This document shows positions 4,284 to 13,900 of a stretch of 14,889 bases of DNA, in pieces. The DNA comes from Vitrella brassicaformis CCMP3155 (taxonomy: Eukaryota; Protista; Chromerida): assembly GCA_001179505.1 (NCBI GenBank), contig CDMY01000862.1, positions 1 through 14,889 of the forward strand, read 5' to 3'. How positions within the stretch are numbered: position 1 is the first letter of the stretch; every line of letters starts with the position of its first letter. Under the pieces are notes generated by a model, which saw only the letters and a program-made list of their open reading frames with translations, did no database searches and had not been told where the DNA came from. A program made the position numbers and the translations under genes.

Positions 4284-4487
4284 GACGGAATGGGCACTTA
4301 TGAGGCCTTTTCGGTGGTTCAGGAAAGGCGAGAAACGGAGAAGGACTTCTGGCGGCCTTTCGTGAAGGATTGCAGGCGGGGAGCCGGGCGCTGGCCGGGA
4401 TAAATATTAGATCAGGCTCGCAGACGAGTGCACCAAGGTTGGCTGCCGCTGCGTGTATCGGCGTTATCTCAATTCGCGGTACATTCG
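4284..4487. promoter_or_regulatory. Short divergent intergenic region between the coiled-coil gene and POLD2 (putative bidirectional promoter)
   Basis: Head-to-head ATGs at 4283 (minus) and 4488 (plus), 204 bp apart. No specific promoter element identified. Confidence 0.5.
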
Positions 4488-5914
4488 ATGGGCCTGGATT
4501 TCCTTCGCAAGCCTCAGGGGGCTGTAGATCTGCACAAGTCCGGCGGTGGCAACCCATCCCTTTCGCGCACCCAGCTGCCGTACGAGAACCTCAGCAAGCG
4601 GTTCCTGGTATCGACGGGCCAGTACAGCCAGCAGTACTCGTCTCTCTACTACGTGCGCCTGGAGCTGCTGGGAGAGGCCGTCCTCAGGGCGGCGCGGGCC
4701 AAGTGGGGAGGGCAGCTGTCGAATGCGCAGTTCCTGGAGGCGCTCAAGAAAGCCAAGGAGGGCGGCGAGTGCGTGGTCATCGGCACCCTCTACAAATCCA
4801 TGACGTACGTTGTTTCACACACACCATCCATAGCCTACCCTACCACGTTCCTTGGCTGTCGCTGGTTAGGCTCAAGCCGTCGGTGCTGCACGAGTACATG
4901 AAGCACCTGGCCATCGAGGGGCCCATGGACAAGTACATCTCCGACAGCGACACCCTCTACCTCGAGGACCAGACGGCTCGCGTCCAGCTGCTGGGCAACA
5001 CCCCGCCCGTCGGCAATGTCACCACCGGCCTCATCGTGGCCGTCAGAGGCCGCATGTCGGACGCATGCTTCCACGCAACCGACTACTGCCTGGCGGGCGC
5101 CACCAGCCCCACCCCAGGACCTGCCCCCTCCCCGGAGGCCCCCCGGTACGTCGCCTTTGTGTCGGGGCTGCGGTTCGGAGACGCGTCGGCCAACGAGGTG
5201 CATCTGCGTCTGCTGCACGAGTACCTGCTGGGCAGCAGCGGCAGTGCTGAGCAGAAGGAGCAGGCGTCGCGCATCGGTCGACTGATAGTGGTGGGCGACA
5301 CGCTGGCCGCCGTCAAGACCGAGGGCTTCGACGTCAAGGTGGTGGAGCAGGCCGACGGGTGGCTGGGGGAGGTGAGCGCCACCCTGCCCGTCGACGTCAT
5401 GCCGGGTGCCACCGACCCCTGCAACGCCACGCTGCCGCAGCAGCCCATCCACGCCGCACTCTTCCCCCACTCCCGCCGGCAGGCCGACACATTCCAGTCG
5501 GTGACCAACCCCTACGACTGCCGGGTCGGTGGCGTCCGCATCATCGGCACCTCGGGGCAGCCCGTCAGGGACCTCATGGCCTTCTCGTCATGCACCACAC
5601 CCCTGGACGCACTCAAGCTGACCGTCCAAGCCCGCTGCCTGGCGCCCACGGCCCCCGACACCATGGGGTGCTACCCATTCACCAAATCCGACCCCTTCTG
5701 CATGGTCAATCAGGACACCGGGGAGGGGGCCAGTGTCATCTTCTCGGGAGGCCACGACCGGGTGCAGTACGAGCGGCTGGGGGTCGGGGGGGAGGGCGGG
5801 GGAGAAGGTCAGGGTCCGCTGTGCGTGTGTGTGCCCGACTTTAGTGTGGAGCCGGTGGTGGTGCTGGTCGACATCGACACACTCGAGGTAGACCTAGTTG
5901 AGTTCGGGGCATAG
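4488..5914 (+). CDS. POLD2: DNA polymerase delta small subunit (Pol31/Cdc1 family), 453 aa, 2 exons (4488-4804, 4870-5914)
   Basis: Family motifs YENLSKRF..QYSQQYSSLYYVRL, VIGTLYKSMTLKPSVLHEY (joined across a 65-nt GT-AG intron at 4805-4869), LYLEDQTARVQL, VDVMPGATDPCNATLPQQPIH, VTNPY, GTSGQPV, APTAPDTMGCYPF..DPF and CVPDFS. Confidence 0.95.
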
Positions 5915-6445: not shown

Positions 6446-7314
6446 TCAGCCTCTCCCCCCGTCAGTCACGCCATCTGTCTGTGTCTTGTGTGCTGGCAGC
6501 CGTGTCGGCAGCTCCAGGCTGCTCGGGTTCTGCGTGTCGCACACCGACGGCCAGCTGCACTCACATGAACAGCCCCTCACTTTGCGGAGCGTCACCGACA
6601 CTCGCCGCCCCCTCTTGAGGATTCGCCCGTCGACACAGTCGGTGCGCCGGGATGCAATGTAGTGTGCCCTAGGGATAGATAGATGGACAACATAACATAC
6701 ACACGACACGCGGCAAGCAAACGAGTGAGTGCATGAAGGGACCGGACCTATCATGGTGTCCATGTGCTCTTCTCCCTCCGCACGCTCACGCACCATGCAT
6801 ATCTCGCTTCGCCTTTGAATATGAGCAGGGAGCCCTTGGTAAGGTACAGGAGCTTCCGATCACACGGCTGTGGTGAATCATCGGCGGCAGCCCTCCTTCG
6901 GAACTCCATGACACAGCCGCTGCCCAACGAGAGCGTGCCGATAGCATCTTCGAACGCCGAATGGGTGTCGATGTGACATCCAATGCCCTCGCCGACATTG
7001 TACTCGTTGACGGTGATCTGATCGGTATCGTCAAGAGGCAAACCCGCCAGCCTTATCTTGCTCAAGAGCCCATCAAACATCGGCGGCAGGTCGCCCACGC
7101 GCTTGCTGATGTCGACAGACTTGGAAGCGTAGCAGAATGCATAACCATAGTGCTGTGTGCGACGCCTTGTAATGCTCTCGGTCCCCCATCGCTCATCAAT
7201 GGCCGACCGCAGGGCCTCCTGTTCGCTGGCACTTAGGAAGTCCTCGATAAGCTGCAGGCCGGGGACGACGACATCTCGCGTGACGCTCGTGCAGGTAGGG
7301 CTCGGAAGTCTCAT
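6446..7314 (-). CDS. ALKBH8: ALKBH8-like 2OG-Fe(II) dioxygenase: AlkB domain plus C-terminal Cys-rich Zn motif; start codon uncertain
   Basis: Motifs PGLQLIEDFLS, RRTQHYGYAF, DQITVNEY..GEGIGCHIDTH (HxD), SLGSGCVMEF, LLIFKGEARYAWAHYI (second iron-binding His, joined across GT-AG intron 6793-6669), RRVSVTLRKV and CECSWPSVCD (compare human CNCSYPLVCD). The ORF-track start at 7422 is GTG; the first in-frame ATG is 7314. An ATG at 7405 would join in frame only through a 31-nt intron (7352-7322). Confidence 0.85.
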
Positions 7315-7509
7315 CAGAGGGCTGGCAAAAGCAGCAGAAAGGACAGACGGACCTGCACGAAGGATGGCCACGTAGATCGTTCTGGGATCTTCCTCTTTTC
7401 TCCATACCTTGTCGGTGTCCACTGTGCTGCAGCCCTTTTCTGGGAGGAGAGGGGGGAAGAACAGGAAGGAAAAAGATCGCCAGATGAGCTCGCAGGCGAC
7501 TGGGGAGGG
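7315..7509. promoter_or_regulatory. Short divergent intergenic region between the ALKBH8-like gene and PPR-ArgC (putative bidirectional promoter)
   Basis: Head-to-head starts at 7314 or 7405 (minus) and 7510 (plus). Strongly purine-skewed tract on the plus strand at 7441-7475. Confidence 0.5.
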
Positions 7510-7720
7510 ATGGAGATATCCCTTGTGTTGGTGATTCTGCTCAATGAAGTCATCGTATTCAATGCTGCATCGGCTTTCCTATCAACTCACGGCGGATCTG
7601 CATTCAGGGCGAGACCGTCAAGCGTCTGGCGGCTGCAGAAGAGACCACCATCATCCAATGCACGTGGCCGCCTGCCAGGACGGGAGTCGGCGCCTCTATC
7701 GGCTGCCTTTATGTCCCCCG
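7510..7720 (+). other. Predicted bipartite targeting leader (signal peptide plus transit peptide) for a complex plastid
   Basis: MEISLVLVILLNEVIVFNAASA followed by F gives an ASA-F cleavage motif with Phe at +1. The next ~35 aa are Ser/Arg-rich and lack acidic residues (FLSTHGGSAFRARPSSVWRLQKRPPSSNARGRLPGR). Confidence 0.7.
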
Positions 7721-10494
7721 CGACGCTGCCGAGGGCTGTGGACGGTGGTGCAGCTGATGTGGATGTGAGTGACATCAGTCGTTCGAGGGTGTCACGCGGC
7801 ACACTGCAGGAGATCGGGTCGCTCATCAAGTCGTTCGGGAGGGTGGGCGCACTCGACCGGTGCTGGCAGTACTGGAATGAGCTGCGTCAGACCGGCACCC
7901 CACCTCCAGCGCACATTCTTACCATCATGGTGTCGGCACTCGCCAACAACGGACAGGTGGGTGCTGCCATGGACTTATTGAGGAGCCTGGAGGGAGATGC
8001 CAACCCTGCAGTGCGGGCGAGCGTCAACGAGGTGCACTACTCGCGCCTTCTCACGGCTCTGATTCGCGGGGACCGCTTCGACGAGGCCCTTGCTCTGTTG
8101 TCTGAGTGGCGGCAGCGGCAGACCGGCCATGGTGAGGGCCCACAGCAGGGAGCCACGCGTGTGCTGTTCCACACCATCCTGGACGCACTGGCGCGTATGG
8201 AGTCCTACGAGCAGGCCGAGTGGGTGGTGGGCCACATGGGCAGGGAGGGAGTGCCGCCCTCACACCTTTCGTACACCATCCTGCTGCGGGCCTGTGAGGG
8301 CAGGGGCGACGGCGGCAAGGCCCTCCGGCTGCTGCAGGACATGTATGACCGCCACATCGACCCTGACAGTGAGGTGTACGAGGCTGTCGTGTCGGCGCTG
8401 GCCGGCAGCCCTGTGGACCTGACCCAAGACCTCACCGAGACCGCCATGGGCATCGTGGCCGACATGGAGGAGCGGCACGTGCCCGTCACGGCGGCTATCC
8501 TCATCCCTCTCCTCAAGGTCTTCGCCAGATGCAGAAAACTACTCAGGTGAACCAACGACTCAACGAAGAGGGAGACACGCCAAGGACAAACAAACGTGTC
8601 GTGGGTAACTCGTCGTGTGTGATTGGATTGTGTCTGTCAGGGGTGTGGAGGTGTGTGAGGACCTCGCTGATGCGTACGGCATGGCCCCCTCAACCACCCT
8701 CTACCAGCACGCCATCCGCGCGGCATTCGATCAAGGCAGCACCGACACACCTGACCTCCTCCTGAAGCGCATGCACGCCAGAGGGGTGCTCTTGTCACAG
8801 GCCGTCTACGACACCCTCGTCGACGGCTATGCACGCAACAAGCGGTTCGAGGAGGGCATCAGCACCATCCGTGAGGCCTTCGGACTGCCGCAAGGAGGAA
8901 CAGGCAGCGCGGCCCTTGGGGGCCATGAGGGCGTGAGCGACAAATCACTGCTGCAGTTCATCGCCCAGATGATCGTCGAGCGAGGCGACGGTGCGGTGGA
9001 CGGGCTCCTGCACGAACTGCGGCACTATGCTGGTGTGGTGGTGGATGGCGGCGCACTGGACCGCTGTGTCCAGAGGGCGCGGGAGGCCGCCACTGCCAAA
9101 GCGGCCGAGGATGAGCTAACACCACTGAGTACCCTTGTGTCAGCCAACGGCCACGGTGGGCAGACAGCGGCAGGAGGGAGTGGGAGGGGTCCATTTAGTC
9201 GGTCATTGGGTGCCGACGCTGCGTCTCGAGCACGGCAGCTGGTGACAGCTCTGCGGTCCGAGCCGTCAGTGCAGGGTGCGGGCGGTGCGCAGAAGATCCG
9301 TGTGGGCGTGCTGGGTGCGTCGGGGTACACGGGGGCCGAGTTGGTGCGGCTGCTGCTCAACCACCCAATTGTGGACATCCAGCTCCTCACGGCCTCTCAG
9401 CGGTCGGCAGGGCAGACACTGGGCGCCGTGTACCCCCAATTCGACTATGTCAGCCAGGCAGCTGACTTGCCGCGGCTGATGGCTTTGGAGGAAGCTTCGG
9501 AGCTCGGTGAGGGCGGGGTGGATGTGTCGAGTCTTGATGCAGTCTTCTGCGCCCTGCCGCATGCCAAGACACAGGAGTTCGTCAAGGTTTTGCCGGCCAG
9601 CGTCAAGGTGATCGACCTGTCGGCTGACTTCCGCCTCATGGACACCGACACTTACGAGCAGTGGTATGGCAAGCCACACGCAGCCCCAGACCTGCAGGCG
9701 ACGGCTGTCTACGGGCTGCCAGAGCTGCATCGGACAAAGGTGGAGGGCGCCCGCATTTGTGCGAACCCTGGTTGCTACCCCACGCCCGCCCAGCTGGCGC
9801 TGTGTCCGCTGCTGTCGCATGAGTCTGGTCCCCTGATCGACGCCGACAGCATCATCATCGATGCCAAGAGTGGCGTCACGGGCGCCGGCCGGGCGCCCAA
9901 ACAAAACACACTCTTCTGCGAAGGTACCGTACACTGATCGTGAGCATGCTCAAGTTACCATCCACCGATCCATCCGTGTGCTGTGCACGACTCTGTGTGT
10001 GTGTGTGTGTGTGTGCGTGTTGGCTGGCGCATGCAGTTGCCGATGGGATGCATGCGTACGGTGTGGCGGCCCACCGGCACGCGCCCGAGATCGAGCAGGG
10101 CCTGTCGGAGGCCGCCGGCCGCCCGGTGGTCGTCAACTTCACGCCCCACCTCGTGCCGCTCAGCAGGGGCATATTCGAGACCATGTACGTCAAGATGCGG
10201 GACGGCGTGACGGCAGAGACTCTCAAACAGACCCTGGCGGACAAGTATGCACCGGAGCCGTTTGTGCACGTGCTGGAGGGCGCCAAGAGTGTGCCCGAGA
10301 CGCGTCACGTGAGGGGCAGCAATGTGGTGGCAATGAACGTGTTTGCGGATCGGATAAGTGGTCGTGCCATCATAACGGCGGTGATGGACAACTTGTGCAA
10401 GGGTGCGAGCGGCCAGGCGGTCCAGAACTTCAACATCATGTTCGGCCTGCCCGAGACCACCGCACTCAGCGGACAGCTGCCACTCTTCCCATGA
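7510..10494 (+). CDS. argC: Fusion protein, 925 aa: signal and transit peptide, about 9 PPR repeats, linker, N-acetyl-gamma-glutamyl-phosphate reductase (ArgC, type 1); exons 7510-8546, 8641-9923, 10037-10494
   Basis: GT-AG introns 8547-8640 and 9924-10036 join all three exons in frame (2778 nt). PPR-like motifs of about 35 aa, e.g. SYTILLRACEGRGDGGKALRLLQDMYDRHIDPD and VYDTLVDGYARNKRFEEG. ArgC motifs: KIRVGVLGASGYTGAELVRLL (NADPH binding, from 9293), FCALPH, IDLSADFR, ANPGCYPT (catalytic Cys at 9773-9775), DAKSGVTGAGR, HRHAPEIEQ, DNLCKGASGQAVQNFN. Confidence 0.92.
9994..10015. repeat. Intronic (TG)n microsatellite
   Basis: TG run in intron 2 of PPR-ArgC, about 20 nt upstream of the acceptor at 10036. 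Confidence 0.9.
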
Positions 10495-10939
10495 GAGAAT
10501 GATTGCACTTCTGTGTGAGGGCTGTGATCGATGGACAGGCCTTGCCCGAATGCATATTTGCATGGGCAATCGATCGTATGGATGGATGGATGGTGGGCGG
10601 TGGGCAGGCGACGATTCCGGAGGGCGTGTCTTCTTTCCTCCGTGCGTGTCGGTGCGATGGATGTTTGGTGGCGTCAGTGAGTCAAGTGACTCAGGCGGGC
10701 TGCGGTTTACGCAGGGATGCATCGACTGGACGAATGTGATTGATCTGTGGATCATCCATCAGTCGGTCGACTGACACGCAGCAAACAAAAGATGAGACGA
10801 GAGTGAGAGTGGTATTGACAAGTAAGTGTCCCTCCCCTAAACACACACGAGCTGAATGTGGCCGGTTAGCTACACTAACACCCACACCTGTCTGTCTGTC
10901 TGTACACACACGTGCACCGCACCCACGCCATGGATCACC

Positions 10940-13900
10940 TCACAGTCTCCCCCAGCTAGGCAGTGGGCTGTCAGAGGGACTCGAGCCTCCCCCTCCGATG
11001 TCCTGCGTGCTCTCTTCATCGTCGCCAAGGGGCATCATCACCTGCGCCAACTCCACCCTACCCAGCCGCGTGTAGCACCGCGCCTCCCTCAGCCCCACCA
11101 CAATCCCCCGGGGTGTGCCGGGCTCGTCACCTCTGAAGTCCTCAGGGTCAGCAACATCCATGTCACGGCGCCAAAACCCACGCACACGCCTGATGGATGG
11201 ATACATACACACACATACGAGGCACACGCAGCAAGATGTAAGTGAGTAGTGCTGGCAGTCGACGGAGTGGAGTGCTGCCTGGCGGCCAGCCGAGCTCAGC
11301 TGTGGGAGGGGGGACTCACTGACTCACTCACTGGATAGCTCGTGCGGGCGTGAAGTCTTTGCACTCCCACATGCAGCCCGTGGCCTCCCCCTTGAAGCGG
11401 CTGAATCGCTTCTTGACGTGAGCAGGCCTGCAGCCACTCACACACATGGCCATCACGGCACGCACAGGGAATGAATGCACTAATGGTTCGACCGATTGAT
11501 GGATGCGACAATGAGTGAGTGAGAGTGTGGCCCTGCCTCCCTGCCTCCCTGGCTGGCTGGCTGGCTGGCTGGCTGTCCGTCGGCACATACATGCATACCT
11601 GCTGTATATTTCCCATGCAGTGAGGTTGGTGAGCAGGAGTCTGAAGTTGCGGAGGCACAGCTGCGACACGAACCACACCCACACCAAGTCAACACCGCAC
11701 ACAAACGCCAGCAGTTGACAACGCCACTGAATGAACACCACACACACACAGACCCAGACACACACACACAATGGGCTCTGCTTGCTCTATGTGTGTGTGT
11801 GTGTGTGTGTGTGCTGTCTGTGTAGCTACCTCTGCAGGTTCGAACCAGGGTGTGTCTGCGTGCATGACGATGTGTGTGTAGTAGAGCCACACGGCGGGGT
11901 AGGTGAGTACGATGCCCAGCCAGCAGAAGAAGATGAAGGTGAAGAACACCCGCTGGTTGCCCACACCAACCGCGTTGTCCACCCACGGACAAAAGTGGTC
12001 GAAACGCCTTACACACACACACACACGGATGCCCCTGTGTGAGCTGTGTATGCCAGGAGTTCGGGTGTGTGTGTGTACCTACCTGATGGTTCTGCCGACC
12101 TCCTTGCAGTAGTGCACGCGGGGCGTCTTGACGCTCTGGGGAATCAACATGATGCCCTACTCGTGTCACGCCGGACAGCCACACAGGTAAGCATATACAC
12201 CACAGGCCGATTTGTCTCTCTTTTTCAGGTGTGGTCTGGTGTGGATTTACTTTGAGCTTCCCCGTGAGTATGTTGTTGAGGTATTCGCCCCGCCCTTGGG
12301 CGATCAGCCGCTGCCGACGCTCGGACGACACACCCGCCATCAACCAACGCATACGACCCTGCACACACGTACACACACACACACACACACAGACAGACAG
12401 AGAGAGGAGATGACTTGTGTCCGCCAGCCCCCACAACTTCGCCCTCTCTCTGTATCTGTCTGTCTGAGGTACCTCGATGTCCCGTATCTGCTGTTGCTTG
12501 TCAGCACTGAGCTCGTAGAATGATCCGTCGGGCACGTTGTCAGTGTCGGTGTTGCCGCCCAATGACGATGTCACCGGCGGGATTGGCTGCTGGACCACCA
12601 CACCCACAGGTGACAGGGGCTGCTCGAAACCATCTTCCTCATCGTCTGCTTGATCGTCCTCCTGCTGCTCGTGCTCCTCGTCTTGATCTTGCTCATGGTG
12701 GTCTTGGCTGTCTTGCTCCGTGTCCGCCTCTTCCTCTCCCTCTCCTTCTCCCTCTTCCTCTCCCTCTCCCTCCACCTGCGCCTCCACCTGCACCTGCCTC
12801 TCCACCTGTGTGTGTTGGTTGCCGTTATCCATGTCCATGTCTTCATCGGGTGTAAGGAAGGCCAAATGACCGGCAGCCGGCTGCTGCTCCCTCGGTGATG
12901 CGTCGGATGAGAAGCCCAATGAGCCCCACCCCCATGTGGTGGTGTCTGTGTCGTCGGGCCAGTGGGAGGGAGAGGGGTCCGGTTCGGGCGGTAGGAGGGG
13001 CGTGTAGATGGCGTCGTCGTCCCTGCCCACCCTGCTGCTGGTAATGGTGGTGGTGGTGGTTGGCTTGGGCTGGGAGTGGCCTGAGGTGGCATTGGTCATC
13101 AGGTCCTCCGCACACCGCAGGGTGAGGCTGTGCAGGTTGCTGATAGATAAACTCAACCCAACCACACACAGGAGATGCGTCACGTGCGATGCGTCAACGT
13201 TGTCCCATAGATACATACATTTCGGTGTGTTGGAGTGATTTCTCGTTGGGCCCCAGGTCATGGGGTGTGATCAGCAGCCGCGGGTTCTGCTCCAGCAGAC
13301 GCACGTCATCAGCCCACGACCTTTACACACACACGTAGATGAAATGAACGAACCACTCCCGTCAGCTGGTTCGGTCCAGCTGAGCTCAGCTGCACTTACC
13401 GTCCCGTCATGAGATGGAACTGTTTTCTGATCTCGATCTCGTCAGCAAAACCTGGATCTGACGTGTACGCTGCACATACATACATACGACACACATACAT
13501 ACAACCAACCGCACACGCGCACACACATCTATCTATGTTGTGGTATGTGGCTGGCTGGCTGGCTGGTTGATTGCATTGAGTGTGGCGTGTCCGGTCCTGA
13601 CAGGCCAGGCTGAGTGACTGACTGACCTAGCACCCACAGCACTTGCACCACCAGCCACATTAGTGCCCACGCCGCAAACATGGCCAGCACGCCGTCGTGG
13701 CCCTCGTTGAGACGAACATCAGTCGACGCTAACCTGACACACACAACACGCAGGGCCACACAGCCAGATGCACAGATGCGTGTGGTGTGGTGGATATGGT
13801 GGTCAGGTGGCGGCGTGCGGTGTGTTTGTGCTACGCGAAGACGAGGAAGCTGAATGCCTGCAGCCACACGTAGATCTGCAAGCCAACCACACACACATGC

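What the first reader, a model, noticed from the sequence alone, without database searches (positions are those of the whole stretch)
7510..10494. PPR RNA-binding tract fused to a complete ArgC arginine-biosynthesis enzyme in one plastid-targeted polypeptide
Seen: about 9 PPR motifs (roughly 7801-8884) run into a Gly/Ala-rich linker and then an intact ArgC (9293-10494). The last PPR motifs, the linker and the N-terminal two-thirds of ArgC lie in one stop-free exon (8641-9923) with none of the microsatellite texture that marks introns here. The join is therefore not a product of merged gene models. No ATG lies between 8969 and the ArgC core, and there is no second targeting leader. Established: PPR proteins bind organellar RNAs in a sequence-specific way. 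PPR fusions I know involve nucleic-acid-acting or regulatory domains (DYW, SMR, PRORP nuclease, tRNA methyltransferase); I know of no PPR-ArgC fusion. Yeast Arg5,6, which contains the ArgC activity, has been reported to bind mitochondrial DNA. Inference: this may couple NADPH or ornithine/arginine (nitrogen) status to plastid transcript processing or stability. Alternatively, ArgC simply uses the PPR gene's targeting leader and is cleaved off at the linker.
Basis: partly seen in the sequence, partly recalled or inferred. Interest (0 to 1): 0.88.

Follow-up and report, generated by a model that had tools for sequence, protein, structure and literature searches.

The report
PPR protein fused to ArgC enzyme
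In the alga Vitrella brassicaformis the only gene for the arginine-pathway enzyme ArgC is joined, in one expressed reading frame, behind an RNA-binding PPR protein whose plastid address label it now shares; the join is real but is more likely a shared import label than a new regulatory device.

Summary
A three-exon gene (7510-8546, 8641-9923, 10037-10494, + strand) encodes a 925-residue, 98.7 kDa protein. In order it has a signal peptide, a transit-peptide-like stretch, nine PPR helix hairpins, a linker of about 140 residues with no known domain, and a complete ArgC with its catalytic motifs. Spliced RNA contigs from three runs remove both introns and cross the linker; one 5.8-kb contig covers the PPR part, the linker and ArgC in a single piece. 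The organism is Vitrella brassicaformis. The same full-length sequence is already public as "Vbra_22408.t1 extended" in Füssy et al. 2019. There it is listed as the species' only argC, plastid-predicted, "N-terminal extension detected", and the PPR nature is not mentioned. The sister alga Chromera velia has a stand-alone 437-residue ArgC with its own leader, so the fusion is specific to this lineage. I found no other PPR-ArgC protein and no paper describing one. My best reading is that ArgC lost its own signal peptide and rides in on the PPR gene's leader. The linker ends in a transit-peptide-like segment, so cleavage after import, as in yeast Arg5,6, is plausible but untested. Nothing supports regulatory coupling between the two halves. 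Interest is moderate.

The parts
7510..7578 (+). Start codon and signal peptide (aa 1-23), ending in ASA|F
   Evidence: The hydrophobic core at aa 3-20 has a Kyte-Doolittle 11-residue mean of 2.1-2.75, the highest in the protein. It is predicted as a helix. ASAFind gives 'Yes, High' with score 4.46 for this N-terminus in Füssy et al. 2019, Table S2.
7579..7800 (+). Transit-peptide-like region (aa 24-97), starting with Phe
   Evidence: It has 12 basic against 5 acidic residues and 15 Ser/Thr in 74 aa. pLDDT is below 50 and it is predicted disordered. GC3 is only 0.50-0.60. Pfam finds nothing.
7801..8546 (+). PPR repeats 1-6 and the first helix of repeat 7 (exon 1)
   Evidence: Pfam PPR_2 has E = 1.9e-20 and PPR E = 3.4e-17. 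Windowed scans were run. Designer PPR proteins and PPR10 in the PDB match. Helix pairs lie at 99-127, 134-161, 174-206, 213-245, 252-280 and 288-321, followed by a helix at 328-344, with pLDDT 70-94.
8547..8640 (+). Intron 1 (GT..AG, 94 nt), lying inside PPR repeat 7
   Evidence: It is removed in RNA contigs of X1, X2 and X3 (table 5). It is present in the DNA contig of X7.
8641..8884 (+). Second helix of PPR repeat 7 and repeats 8-9 (start of exon 2)
   Evidence: The AlphaFold helices have pLDDT 82-94. PDB designer PPR proteins match exon 2 residues 3-78. Pfam PPR matches at aa 401-424.
8885..9112 (+). Gly-rich spacer (aa 428-445) and a low-confidence helical tail (aa 446-503)
   Evidence: Pfam finds nothing. 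Exon 2 residues 85-102 have pLDDT below 50. The helices at residues 100-157 have pLDDT around 55. GC3 is 0.67-0.80.
9113..9295 (+). Low-complexity linker (aa 504-564); from F531 (nt 9194) it is a transit-peptide-like segment
   Evidence: The region is predicted disordered, with pLDDT 29-45, followed by one helix. GC3 falls to 0.53 at aa 511-540, as in the N-terminal leader. Residues 528-564 have 6 basic against 2 acidic residues. The segment lies opposite the end of Chromera's transit peptide in the BLAST alignment, but the similarity is not significant.
9296..9923 (+). ArgC NADP-binding domain and the start of the catalytic domain, including GASGYTG and the catalytic Cys724 (NPGCYPT, nt 9773)
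   Evidence: TIGR01850 matches model positions 1-195 at 211 bits. Pfam Semialdhyde_dh has E = 3e-26. Rice ArgC structure 2cvo matches at E = 8e-62. Motifs are conserved in the alignment.
9924..10036 (+). Intron 2 (GT..AG, 113 nt) with a (GT)n microsatellite
   Evidence: The contig pieces of X1, X2 and X3 jump from 9921 to 10035 (table 8). The sequence is shown.
10037..10494 (+). ArgC catalytic/dimerisation domain, C-terminal part, with the HRHAPEIEQ motif; stop codon at 10492-10494
   Evidence: TIGR01850 matches model positions 198-340 at 169 bits. Pfam Semialdhyde_dhC_1 has E = 7.5e-37. Motifs are conserved in the alignment.

Best explanation
This is a real, expressed gene fusion specific to the Vitrella lineage. 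It produces one 925-residue precursor: a bipartite plastid leader, nine PPR repeats, a largely unstructured linker of about 140 residues, and a complete ArgC.

Vitrella's only ArgC has lost the signal peptide that its Chromera orthologue still carries. It now enters the four-membrane plastid on the leader of the PPR gene that lay upstream.

Inside the plastid, ArgC catalyses the third step of ornithine synthesis (N-acetylglutamyl-phosphate to N-acetylglutamate semialdehyde, using NADPH). The PPR module binds plastid RNA. The two jobs are probably independent.

The linker ends in a segment that starts with Phe, is rich in Ser, Arg and Ala, and is net basic. It looks like ArgC's former transit peptide. 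I think it about as likely as not that the stromal processing peptidase cuts there and frees a normal-sized ArgC, as mitochondrial MPP does with fungal Arg5,6.

Shown: the gene structure, the single reading frame, the spliced transcripts, intact motifs in both modules, the plastid-type N-terminus, and the stand-alone orthologue in Chromera.

Inferred: the order of evolutionary events, the independence of the two functions, and cleavage.
For: **One expressed reading frame**
- The reading frame and splice sites are set out.
- Spliced RNA contigs run across both introns and the linker in three runs.
- The identical full-length protein was derived from an MMETSP transcript in Füssy et al. 2019 (PMC6668581, supplement).

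**The only argC, plastid-located**
- That paper lists one argC per species, both in the plastid column.
- It gives ASAFind 'Yes, High' for this N-terminus.
- It places ornithine synthesis in the chromerid plastid.

**Stand-alone orthologue in the sister species**
- The closest homologue is Chromera Cvel_4905: 437 aa, about 60% identical, with its own signal peptide, Phe and transit peptide.

**Both modules intact**
- ArgC motifs are intact.
- The PPR solenoid is intact and confidently folded.

**A loose, leader-like linker**
- The linker has no domain and is disordered.
- It has leader-like codon composition and transit-peptide-like amino-acid make-up.

**Precedents**
- Arg5,6 is imported as a tandem precursor with ArgC at the C-terminal end and is cut at an internal presequence-like site (PMC8734313).
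- Dinoflagellate plastid polyproteins share one signal peptide (PMC11453091).
Against: - No protein-level data exist, so cleavage is a guess.
- The linker's similarity to Chromera's transit peptide is not significant: score 22 against a shuffle mean of 25.6.
- I could not examine synteny in Chromera, so an adjacent ancestral PPR gene is assumed rather than shown.
- The PPR module has no detectable orthologue, so its constraint and RNA target are unknown.
- Contig depth is higher over ArgC than over PPR in X1 and X2. This could hide an internal transcription start, although the deeper contigs also cover downstream sequence.
Confidence: 0.6

Rival explanations
1. The fusion is a stable bifunctional protein in which ArgC's ligand state (NADPH, substrate, arginine or nitrogen status) controls RNA binding by the PPR tract, or in which the PPR tract tethers ArgC to plastid RNA or the nucleoid.
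For: - Both modules are intact and lie in one reading frame.
- No in-frame start codon would allow a separate ArgC with a leader.
- From my own knowledge, not checked here, yeast Arg5,6 has been reported to associate with mitochondrial DNA.
Against: - The fusion is absent from the sister species and from everything else searched.
- The two modules are joined by a long, disordered, compositionally relaxed linker rather than a structured interface.
- First-stage and follow-up notes of this scan report many fused genes in this genome (mostly unchecked), so a fusion by itself is weak evidence of coupling.
Confidence: 0.12
2. The PPR tract is a decaying remnant that now serves only as a long spacer behind the leader. 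The gene is functionally just argC.
For: - No orthologue of the PPR module was found.
- Several repeats lack the canonical residues at the RNA-code positions, judged by my own reading of the alignment.
- Füssy et al. treated the region simply as an N-terminal extension.
Against: - All nine hairpins are stop-free.
- They have coding-type GC3 of 0.70-0.90, unlike the leader and linker.
- They match PPR models strongly and fold with pLDDT 70-94 even without an alignment.
Confidence: 0.1
3. A separate ArgC is made from an internal transcription start or from internal initiation at Met456 (nt 8969). The fused reading frame would then be a minor read-through product.
For: - Contig depth over ArgC is about 1.7-2.5 times that over PPR in X1 and X2.
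- X2 has a coverage gap at 9023-9218.
Against: - The product would lack any signal peptide, although the pathway is predicted to be plastidial.
- X3 and X1 contigs cross the region without a break.
- No loose ends or joints were listed in the linker, although 15 loose ends and 34 contig pieces were not shown.
- The deeper contigs also include downstream sequence, and contig depth is a whole-contig mean.
Confidence: 0.07
4. The fusion is an artefact: an assembly misjoin or merged gene models.
For: The public database model Vbra_22408.t1 evidently lacked the N-terminal part and had to be extended from transcript data.
Against: - The join lies inside a single exon.
- DNA contig X7 covers 6900-9984 colinearly.
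- RNA contigs from three runs in two studies, plus the MMETSP-derived sequence in the paper (which may be the same data as one of these runs), all carry the join.
Confidence: 0.02

Closest known systems
Fungal Arg5,6 tandem precursor (ArgB-ArgC), cleaved internally by the mitochondrial processing peptidase (PMC8734313)
   Same: - ArgC is the C-terminal half of a two-module precursor.
- The precursor has a single N-terminal organelle-targeting signal.
- An internal targeting-peptide-like stretch lies between the modules.
   Different: - The partner here is a PPR RNA-binding protein, not the neighbouring pathway enzyme ArgB.
- The organelle is a four-membrane plastid, not a mitochondrion.
- Cleavage has not been shown.
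- The fusion is confined to one species as far as I searched, rather than conserved across a kingdom.
Stand-alone plastid ArgC of Chromera velia (Cvel_4905) and the chloroplast ArgC of plants (PDB 2cvo, 1xyg)
   Same: - It is the same enzyme family, 59-62% identical to Chromera and 49-52% to plants.
- All catalytic and NADP-binding motifs are present.
- A plastid location is predicted.
   Different: Those proteins are 360-440 residues long with their own leader. The Vitrella protein carries 564 extra N-terminal residues, including nine PPR repeats.
P-type PPR proteins (for example maize PPR10, plant pTAC2/PAP2) and PPR fusions with nucleic-acid-acting domains (DYW, SMR, PRORP nuclease)
   Same: - It has tandem helix hairpins of about 35 residues.
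- It is organelle-targeted.
- It matches PPR models and solved PPR structures.
   Different: - The C-terminal partner is an amino-acid biosynthesis dehydrogenase with no known action on nucleic acids.
- No orthologue or RNA target is known.
Plastid-targeted polyproteins of dinoflagellates and euglenids (Rubisco II, light-harvesting proteins; PMC11453091)
   Same: One signal peptide serves several mature proteins made from one reading frame, in a related (myzozoan) lineage.
   Different: Those are tandem copies of the same protein with repeated short linkers. Here two unrelated proteins are joined once.

Membership tests
Pentatricopeptide repeat (PPR) proteins | Tandem array of degenerate motifs of about 35 residues that match PPR profiles | tested here: met
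   Pfam PPR_2 scores 73.2 bits (cut-off 30) and PPR 61.8 bits (cut-off 25). TIGR00756 has E = 1.5e-19. Designer PPR proteins match at E = 2e-36.
Pentatricopeptide repeat (PPR) proteins | Alpha-solenoid of helix-turn-helix hairpins | tested here: met
   AlphaFold single-sequence models show nine consecutive helix pairs with pLDDT 70-94.
Pentatricopeptide repeat (PPR) proteins | Sequence-specific binding of organellar RNA through the code residues at positions 5 and 35 | not testable with these tools
   By my own reading of the alignment, only some repeats carry canonical pairs (for example repeat 5, Thr/Asp). No target can be predicted.
[quoted passage not shown] | Full-length match to the equivalog model above its cut-off | tested here: met
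   Model positions 1-195 score 211.1 bits and positions 198-340 of 345 score 169.4 bits in the two exons. The simple sum of 380 bits exceeds the cut-off of 233.6. The spliced protein could not be scored in one piece.
[quoted passage not shown] | NADP-binding GxxGxxG motif, the catalytic Cys in PGCYPT and the HRHxPE His motif | tested here: met
   GASGYTG, NPGCYPT (Cys724) and HRHAPEIEQ are conserved against 11 homologues.
[quoted passage not shown] | Enzyme activity or complementation of an argC mutant | not testable with these tools
   This needs an experiment.
Organelle tandem precursors of the Arg5,6 type | Two distinct mature modules behind a single N-terminal targeting signal in one reading frame | tested here: met
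   There is no second hydrophobic signal peptide; the highest Kyte-Doolittle 11-residue mean in the linker is 1.77, against 2.75 at the N-terminus.
Organelle tandem precursors of the Arg5,6 type | An internal targeting-peptide-like cleavage region between the modules | tested here: inconclusive
   The make-up and the leading Phe resemble a transit peptide. Similarity to Chromera's leader is not above shuffles. No cleavage-site predictor was available.
Organelle tandem precursors of the Arg5,6 type | Separation into two proteins after import | not testable with these tools
   This needs proteomics or a Western blot.
Dinoflagellate/euglenid plastid polyproteins | Several copies of the same mature protein separated by repeated short linkers | tested here: not met
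   There are two unrelated modules and one linker.

The most novel reading that the evidence does not exclude
The 98.7 kDa protein stays in one piece in the plastid and works as a metabolite-sensing RNA-binding protein, or as an RNA- or nucleoid-tethered enzyme. Ornithine/arginine synthesis or the NADPH level would then feed directly into the stability or translation of particular plastid transcripts.
Probability: 0.1. Interest if true: 0.8.

Novelty: new variant of a known kind. Interest (0 to 1): 0.42.

Why it matters
A PPR protein joined to an amino-acid biosynthesis enzyme has not been described in the literature I could search, and no second example turned up in the protein collections.

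If the two halves are cut apart after import, this would be a natural tandem precursor of two different proteins in a chromerid plastid. It would then be a handle on how internal processing sites arise in complex plastids, parallel to mitochondrial Arg5,6.

If the halves stay together, it would be a rare physical link between nitrogen metabolism and plastid RNA.

There is also a practical point for annotation. Vitrella's only argC cannot be found or localised correctly unless the PPR-coding exons are included in its gene model.

Tried and rejected
**Searches for a second PPR-ArgC fusion or a relative**
- Exhaustive HMMER search of 1.84 billion representatives with the exon-2 protein. All of the best 150 hits match only the ArgC half, and the longest is 512 aa. 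Clusters can hide longer members: one search shows a 775-aa member under a 393-aa representative. Absence of other fusions is therefore soft evidence. The window's own protein was not listed either.
- Word-indexed search with exon 2. It returned only ArgC-only proteins of 248-476 aa. The length filter (235-747 aa) would exclude full-length fusions.
- Search with the exon-1 PPR protein. It found nothing at E <= 1e-3.
- ESM Atlas. It returned only generic PPR clusters at scores of 0.75 or lower, and none with both families.
- Metagenome scans. The PPR-tail and linker query found no relative. The ArgC query found 44 loci, all 58% identical or less, and I did not follow them up.

**Other tests**
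- Test for a relic transit peptide by aligning the linker with Chromera's leader. It was not significant, so I kept it only as a compositional argument.
- Pfam on the linker and on the leader found nothing.
- I considered reading the depth step between the PPR and ArgC contigs as an internal promoter. I set this aside because Logan contig depth is a whole-contig mean and the deeper contigs extend into downstream sequence.

**Limits and literature**
- I could not submit the spliced 925-aa protein to any tool as one sequence, because no reference crosses the introns. Full-length scoring, folding and exact look-up were therefore not done.
- Literature searches for PPR plus ArgC, Vitrella plus PPR, and Vbra_22408 gave no description of the fusion.
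Full report
**What is there**

The + strand between 7510 and 10494 holds three long open frames: 7510-8550, 8615-9937 and 9940-10494. They join through two GT..AG introns into one 2778-nt coding sequence of 925 codons, with exons 7510-8546, 8641-9923 and 10037-10494. The predicted precursor weighs 98.7 kDa.

**RNA evidence**

I laid the contigs of four public runs on 6900-11100.

- In run X3, one 5818-nt contig covers 7551-8542, 8637-9921 and 10035-11100 without a break. Both introns are removed, and the PPR region, linker and ArgC are continuous.
- X1 and X2 are low-depth RNA runs. They show the same two joints in shorter contigs.
- X7 is unspliced DNA and is colinear over 6900-9984.
- No joint or loose end was listed inside the linker, although 15 loose ends and 34 contig pieces were not shown.
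- X2 has a hole at 9023-9218. X1 has a contig break at 9033-9059. Depth is higher on the ArgC side in both. Logan depths are whole-contig means, and the deeper contigs run on into downstream sequence, so I do not read this as an internal promoter, though it is not excluded.

**The PPR half**

- Pfam gives PPR_2 at 73.2 bits and PPR at 61.8 bits on exon 1, both well above their cut-offs.
- Scans in 60-residue windows place individual motifs at residues 104-127, 138-161, 175-203, 218-248, 254-281 and 401-424.
- Designer PPR proteins, PPR10 and pTAC2/PAP2 in the PDB match residues 99-299 with E-values down to 2e-36. Designer PPRs also match the first 78 residues of exon 2.
- Single-sequence AlphaFold models give nine consecutive helix hairpins from residue 99 to 426, with pLDDT mostly 70-94. 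The seventh hairpin is split by intron 1.

**The ArgC half**

- NCBIfam TIGR01850 (argC, equivalog) matches model positions 1-195 in exon 2 and 198-340 of 345 in exon 3.
- The closest solved structures are the rice and Arabidopsis chloroplast enzymes.
- In an alignment with 11 homologues, the NADP-binding GASGYTG, the catalytic NPGCYPT (Cys724), DAKSG.TGAGR, HRHAPEIEQ and the C-terminal KGASGQAVQN are all conserved.

The enzyme looks fully functional.

**The N-terminus**

- Residues 3-20 form the most hydrophobic stretch of the protein.
- They are followed by ASA|F and then a 74-residue region that is net basic, rich in Ser, Arg and Ala, and predicted disordered.
- This is the bipartite signal expected for a complex red-type plastid.
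- Füssy et al. 2019 scored this very N-terminus with ASAFind as 'Yes, High', with a score of 4.46 against a Vitrella threshold of 1.

**The linker (residues 428-564, nt 8885-9295)**

- Pfam finds nothing in it.
- AlphaFold predicts a disordered Gly-rich spacer, three low-confidence helices (446-503), a disordered stretch (about 501-537) and one helix (533-552) just before ArgC.
- GC3 is 0.70-0.97 across both domains. It falls to 0.53 at residues 511-540, the same range as the N-terminal leader at 0.50-0.60.
- From Phe531 the sequence has 6 basic against 2 acidic residues and is rich in Ser, Ala and Gly. That is the make-up of a transit peptide.
- In the BLAST alignment it lies opposite the last 30 residues of the Chromera ArgC transit peptide.
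- That similarity is not above shuffled controls, so it remains a compositional and positional argument only.
- The linker frame is stop-free. The other two frames have 5 and 3 stops, and chance gives a stop-free frame in 2.3% of shuffles.
- The only in-frame ATG after 8771 and before the ArgC core is at 8969 (Met456). Three out-of-frame ATGs open 30 codons or fewer.

**Organism and prior record**

Earlier notes of this scan name the genome as Vitrella brassicaformis. Füssy et al. 2019 (PMC6668581) confirm this.

- Their supplementary sequence 'Vbra_22408.t1__M_Transcript_27098extd' is identical to my spliced model from MEISLVLV through the PPR region and as far as the passage is shown, to four residues before the ArgC core.
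- Their Table S1 lists a single argC for each chromerid, both in the plastid column: Cvel_4905.t1 and Vbra_22408.t1. The Vitrella entry is flagged 'elongated from transcriptomic data' and 'SP or N-terminal extension detected'.
- The paper places ornithine synthesis in the plastid.
- It does not use the word pentatricopeptide, since it is absent from the Vitrella + pentatricopeptide search. The sequence is therefore public, but the PPR nature of the 'extension' seems unremarked.

**Relatives**

- The closest homologue of the ArgC part is Chromera velia Cvel_4905. It is 437 residues long, 59-62% identical, and has its own signal peptide, Phe and transit peptide but no PPR.
- All other hits in two large protein searches match only the ArgC half.
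- The PPR half has no detectable relative in the 190-604 residue range.
- Metagenome scans found no relative of the PPR tail and linker, and only loci 58% identical or less for the ArgC query.
- The ESM Atlas has no cluster combining both families.
- Caveats apply. The clustered libraries can hide long members under short representatives. The word search has a length window. Eukaryote genomes could not be scanned directly.

**Literature**

Searches found no PPR-ArgC fusion.

**Interpretation**

The simplest history is as follows. An ArgC gene like Chromera's, with its own bipartite leader, came to lie downstream of a PPR gene. The PPR stop codon, the intergenic DNA and ArgC's signal-peptide-coding part were then lost or read through. 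This left a leader-like relic as the linker.

The consequence is firm. Vitrella's only ArgC has no signal peptide of its own, so it must enter the plastid as part of the 925-residue precursor.

What happens afterwards is open. A direct precedent is fungal Arg5,6. There ArgC is also the C-terminal half of a tandem precursor and is released by the processing peptidase at an internal presequence-like site (PMC8734313). Related dinoflagellates import plastid polyproteins behind one signal peptide (PMC11453091). I therefore favour shared import with independent functions, and I put cleavage at roughly even odds.

- The fusion is absent from the sister species.
- The junction is loose and compositionally relaxed.
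- First-stage and follow-up notes of this scan report many fused genes in this genome, two of which involve PPR genes (mostly unchecked).

**Verdict**

This is a new variant of a known kind: an organelle tandem precursor, or equally a PPR protein with an unusual C-terminal partner. Interest is moderate.

Noticed in passing
window 6751-7422 (-), intron 7351-7405: A 2OG-Fe(II) oxygenase (AlkB-like, PF13532) gene lies head-to-head with the PPR-ArgC gene. Its intron is removed in the RNA contigs of X1 and X2. About 75-90 nt separate the two genes' 5' ends, which suggests a very compact bidirectional promoter.
   Followed up: partly
window 4370-5911 (+): A DNA polymerase subunit B (PF04042 plus the pol-delta OB-fold PF18018) is encoded in a stretch of 65-70% GC, the highest in the window.
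   Followed up: no
window 10495 to at least about 13500; ORF 11480-13261 (-): The X3 transcript contig runs at least 2.4 kb past the ArgC stop codon. It passes over a convergent 593-residue ORF that has no Pfam match. This is either a very long 3'UTR or overlapping convergent transcripts merged by the assembler.
   Followed up: no
window 8730-8750, 10576-10598, 10881-10905: Stretches of about 21 nt are shared with many unrelated and deeper contigs in all four runs, so they are short dispersed repeats. The first lies inside PPR repeat 8, and the second is a (GGAT)n-like run in the 3'UTR (tables 7-8).
   Followed up: no
window 7510-7800 and 9140-9230: Third-position GC drops to 0.50-0.60 in the targeting leader and to 0.53 in the middle of the linker, against 0.70-0.97 in the two domains. 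This compositional signature might help to find leaders and fusion seams elsewhere in this genome.
   Followed up: partly
alignment (proteins P0173, P0177, P0202): The ArgC proteins of several stramenopile algae (Fibrocapsa, Vaucheria, Ectocarpus) appear to start directly at the enzyme core with no leader. Chattonella and Chromera carry a signal peptide followed by Phe. The location of ArgC may therefore differ among algae with red-derived plastids.
   Followed up: no
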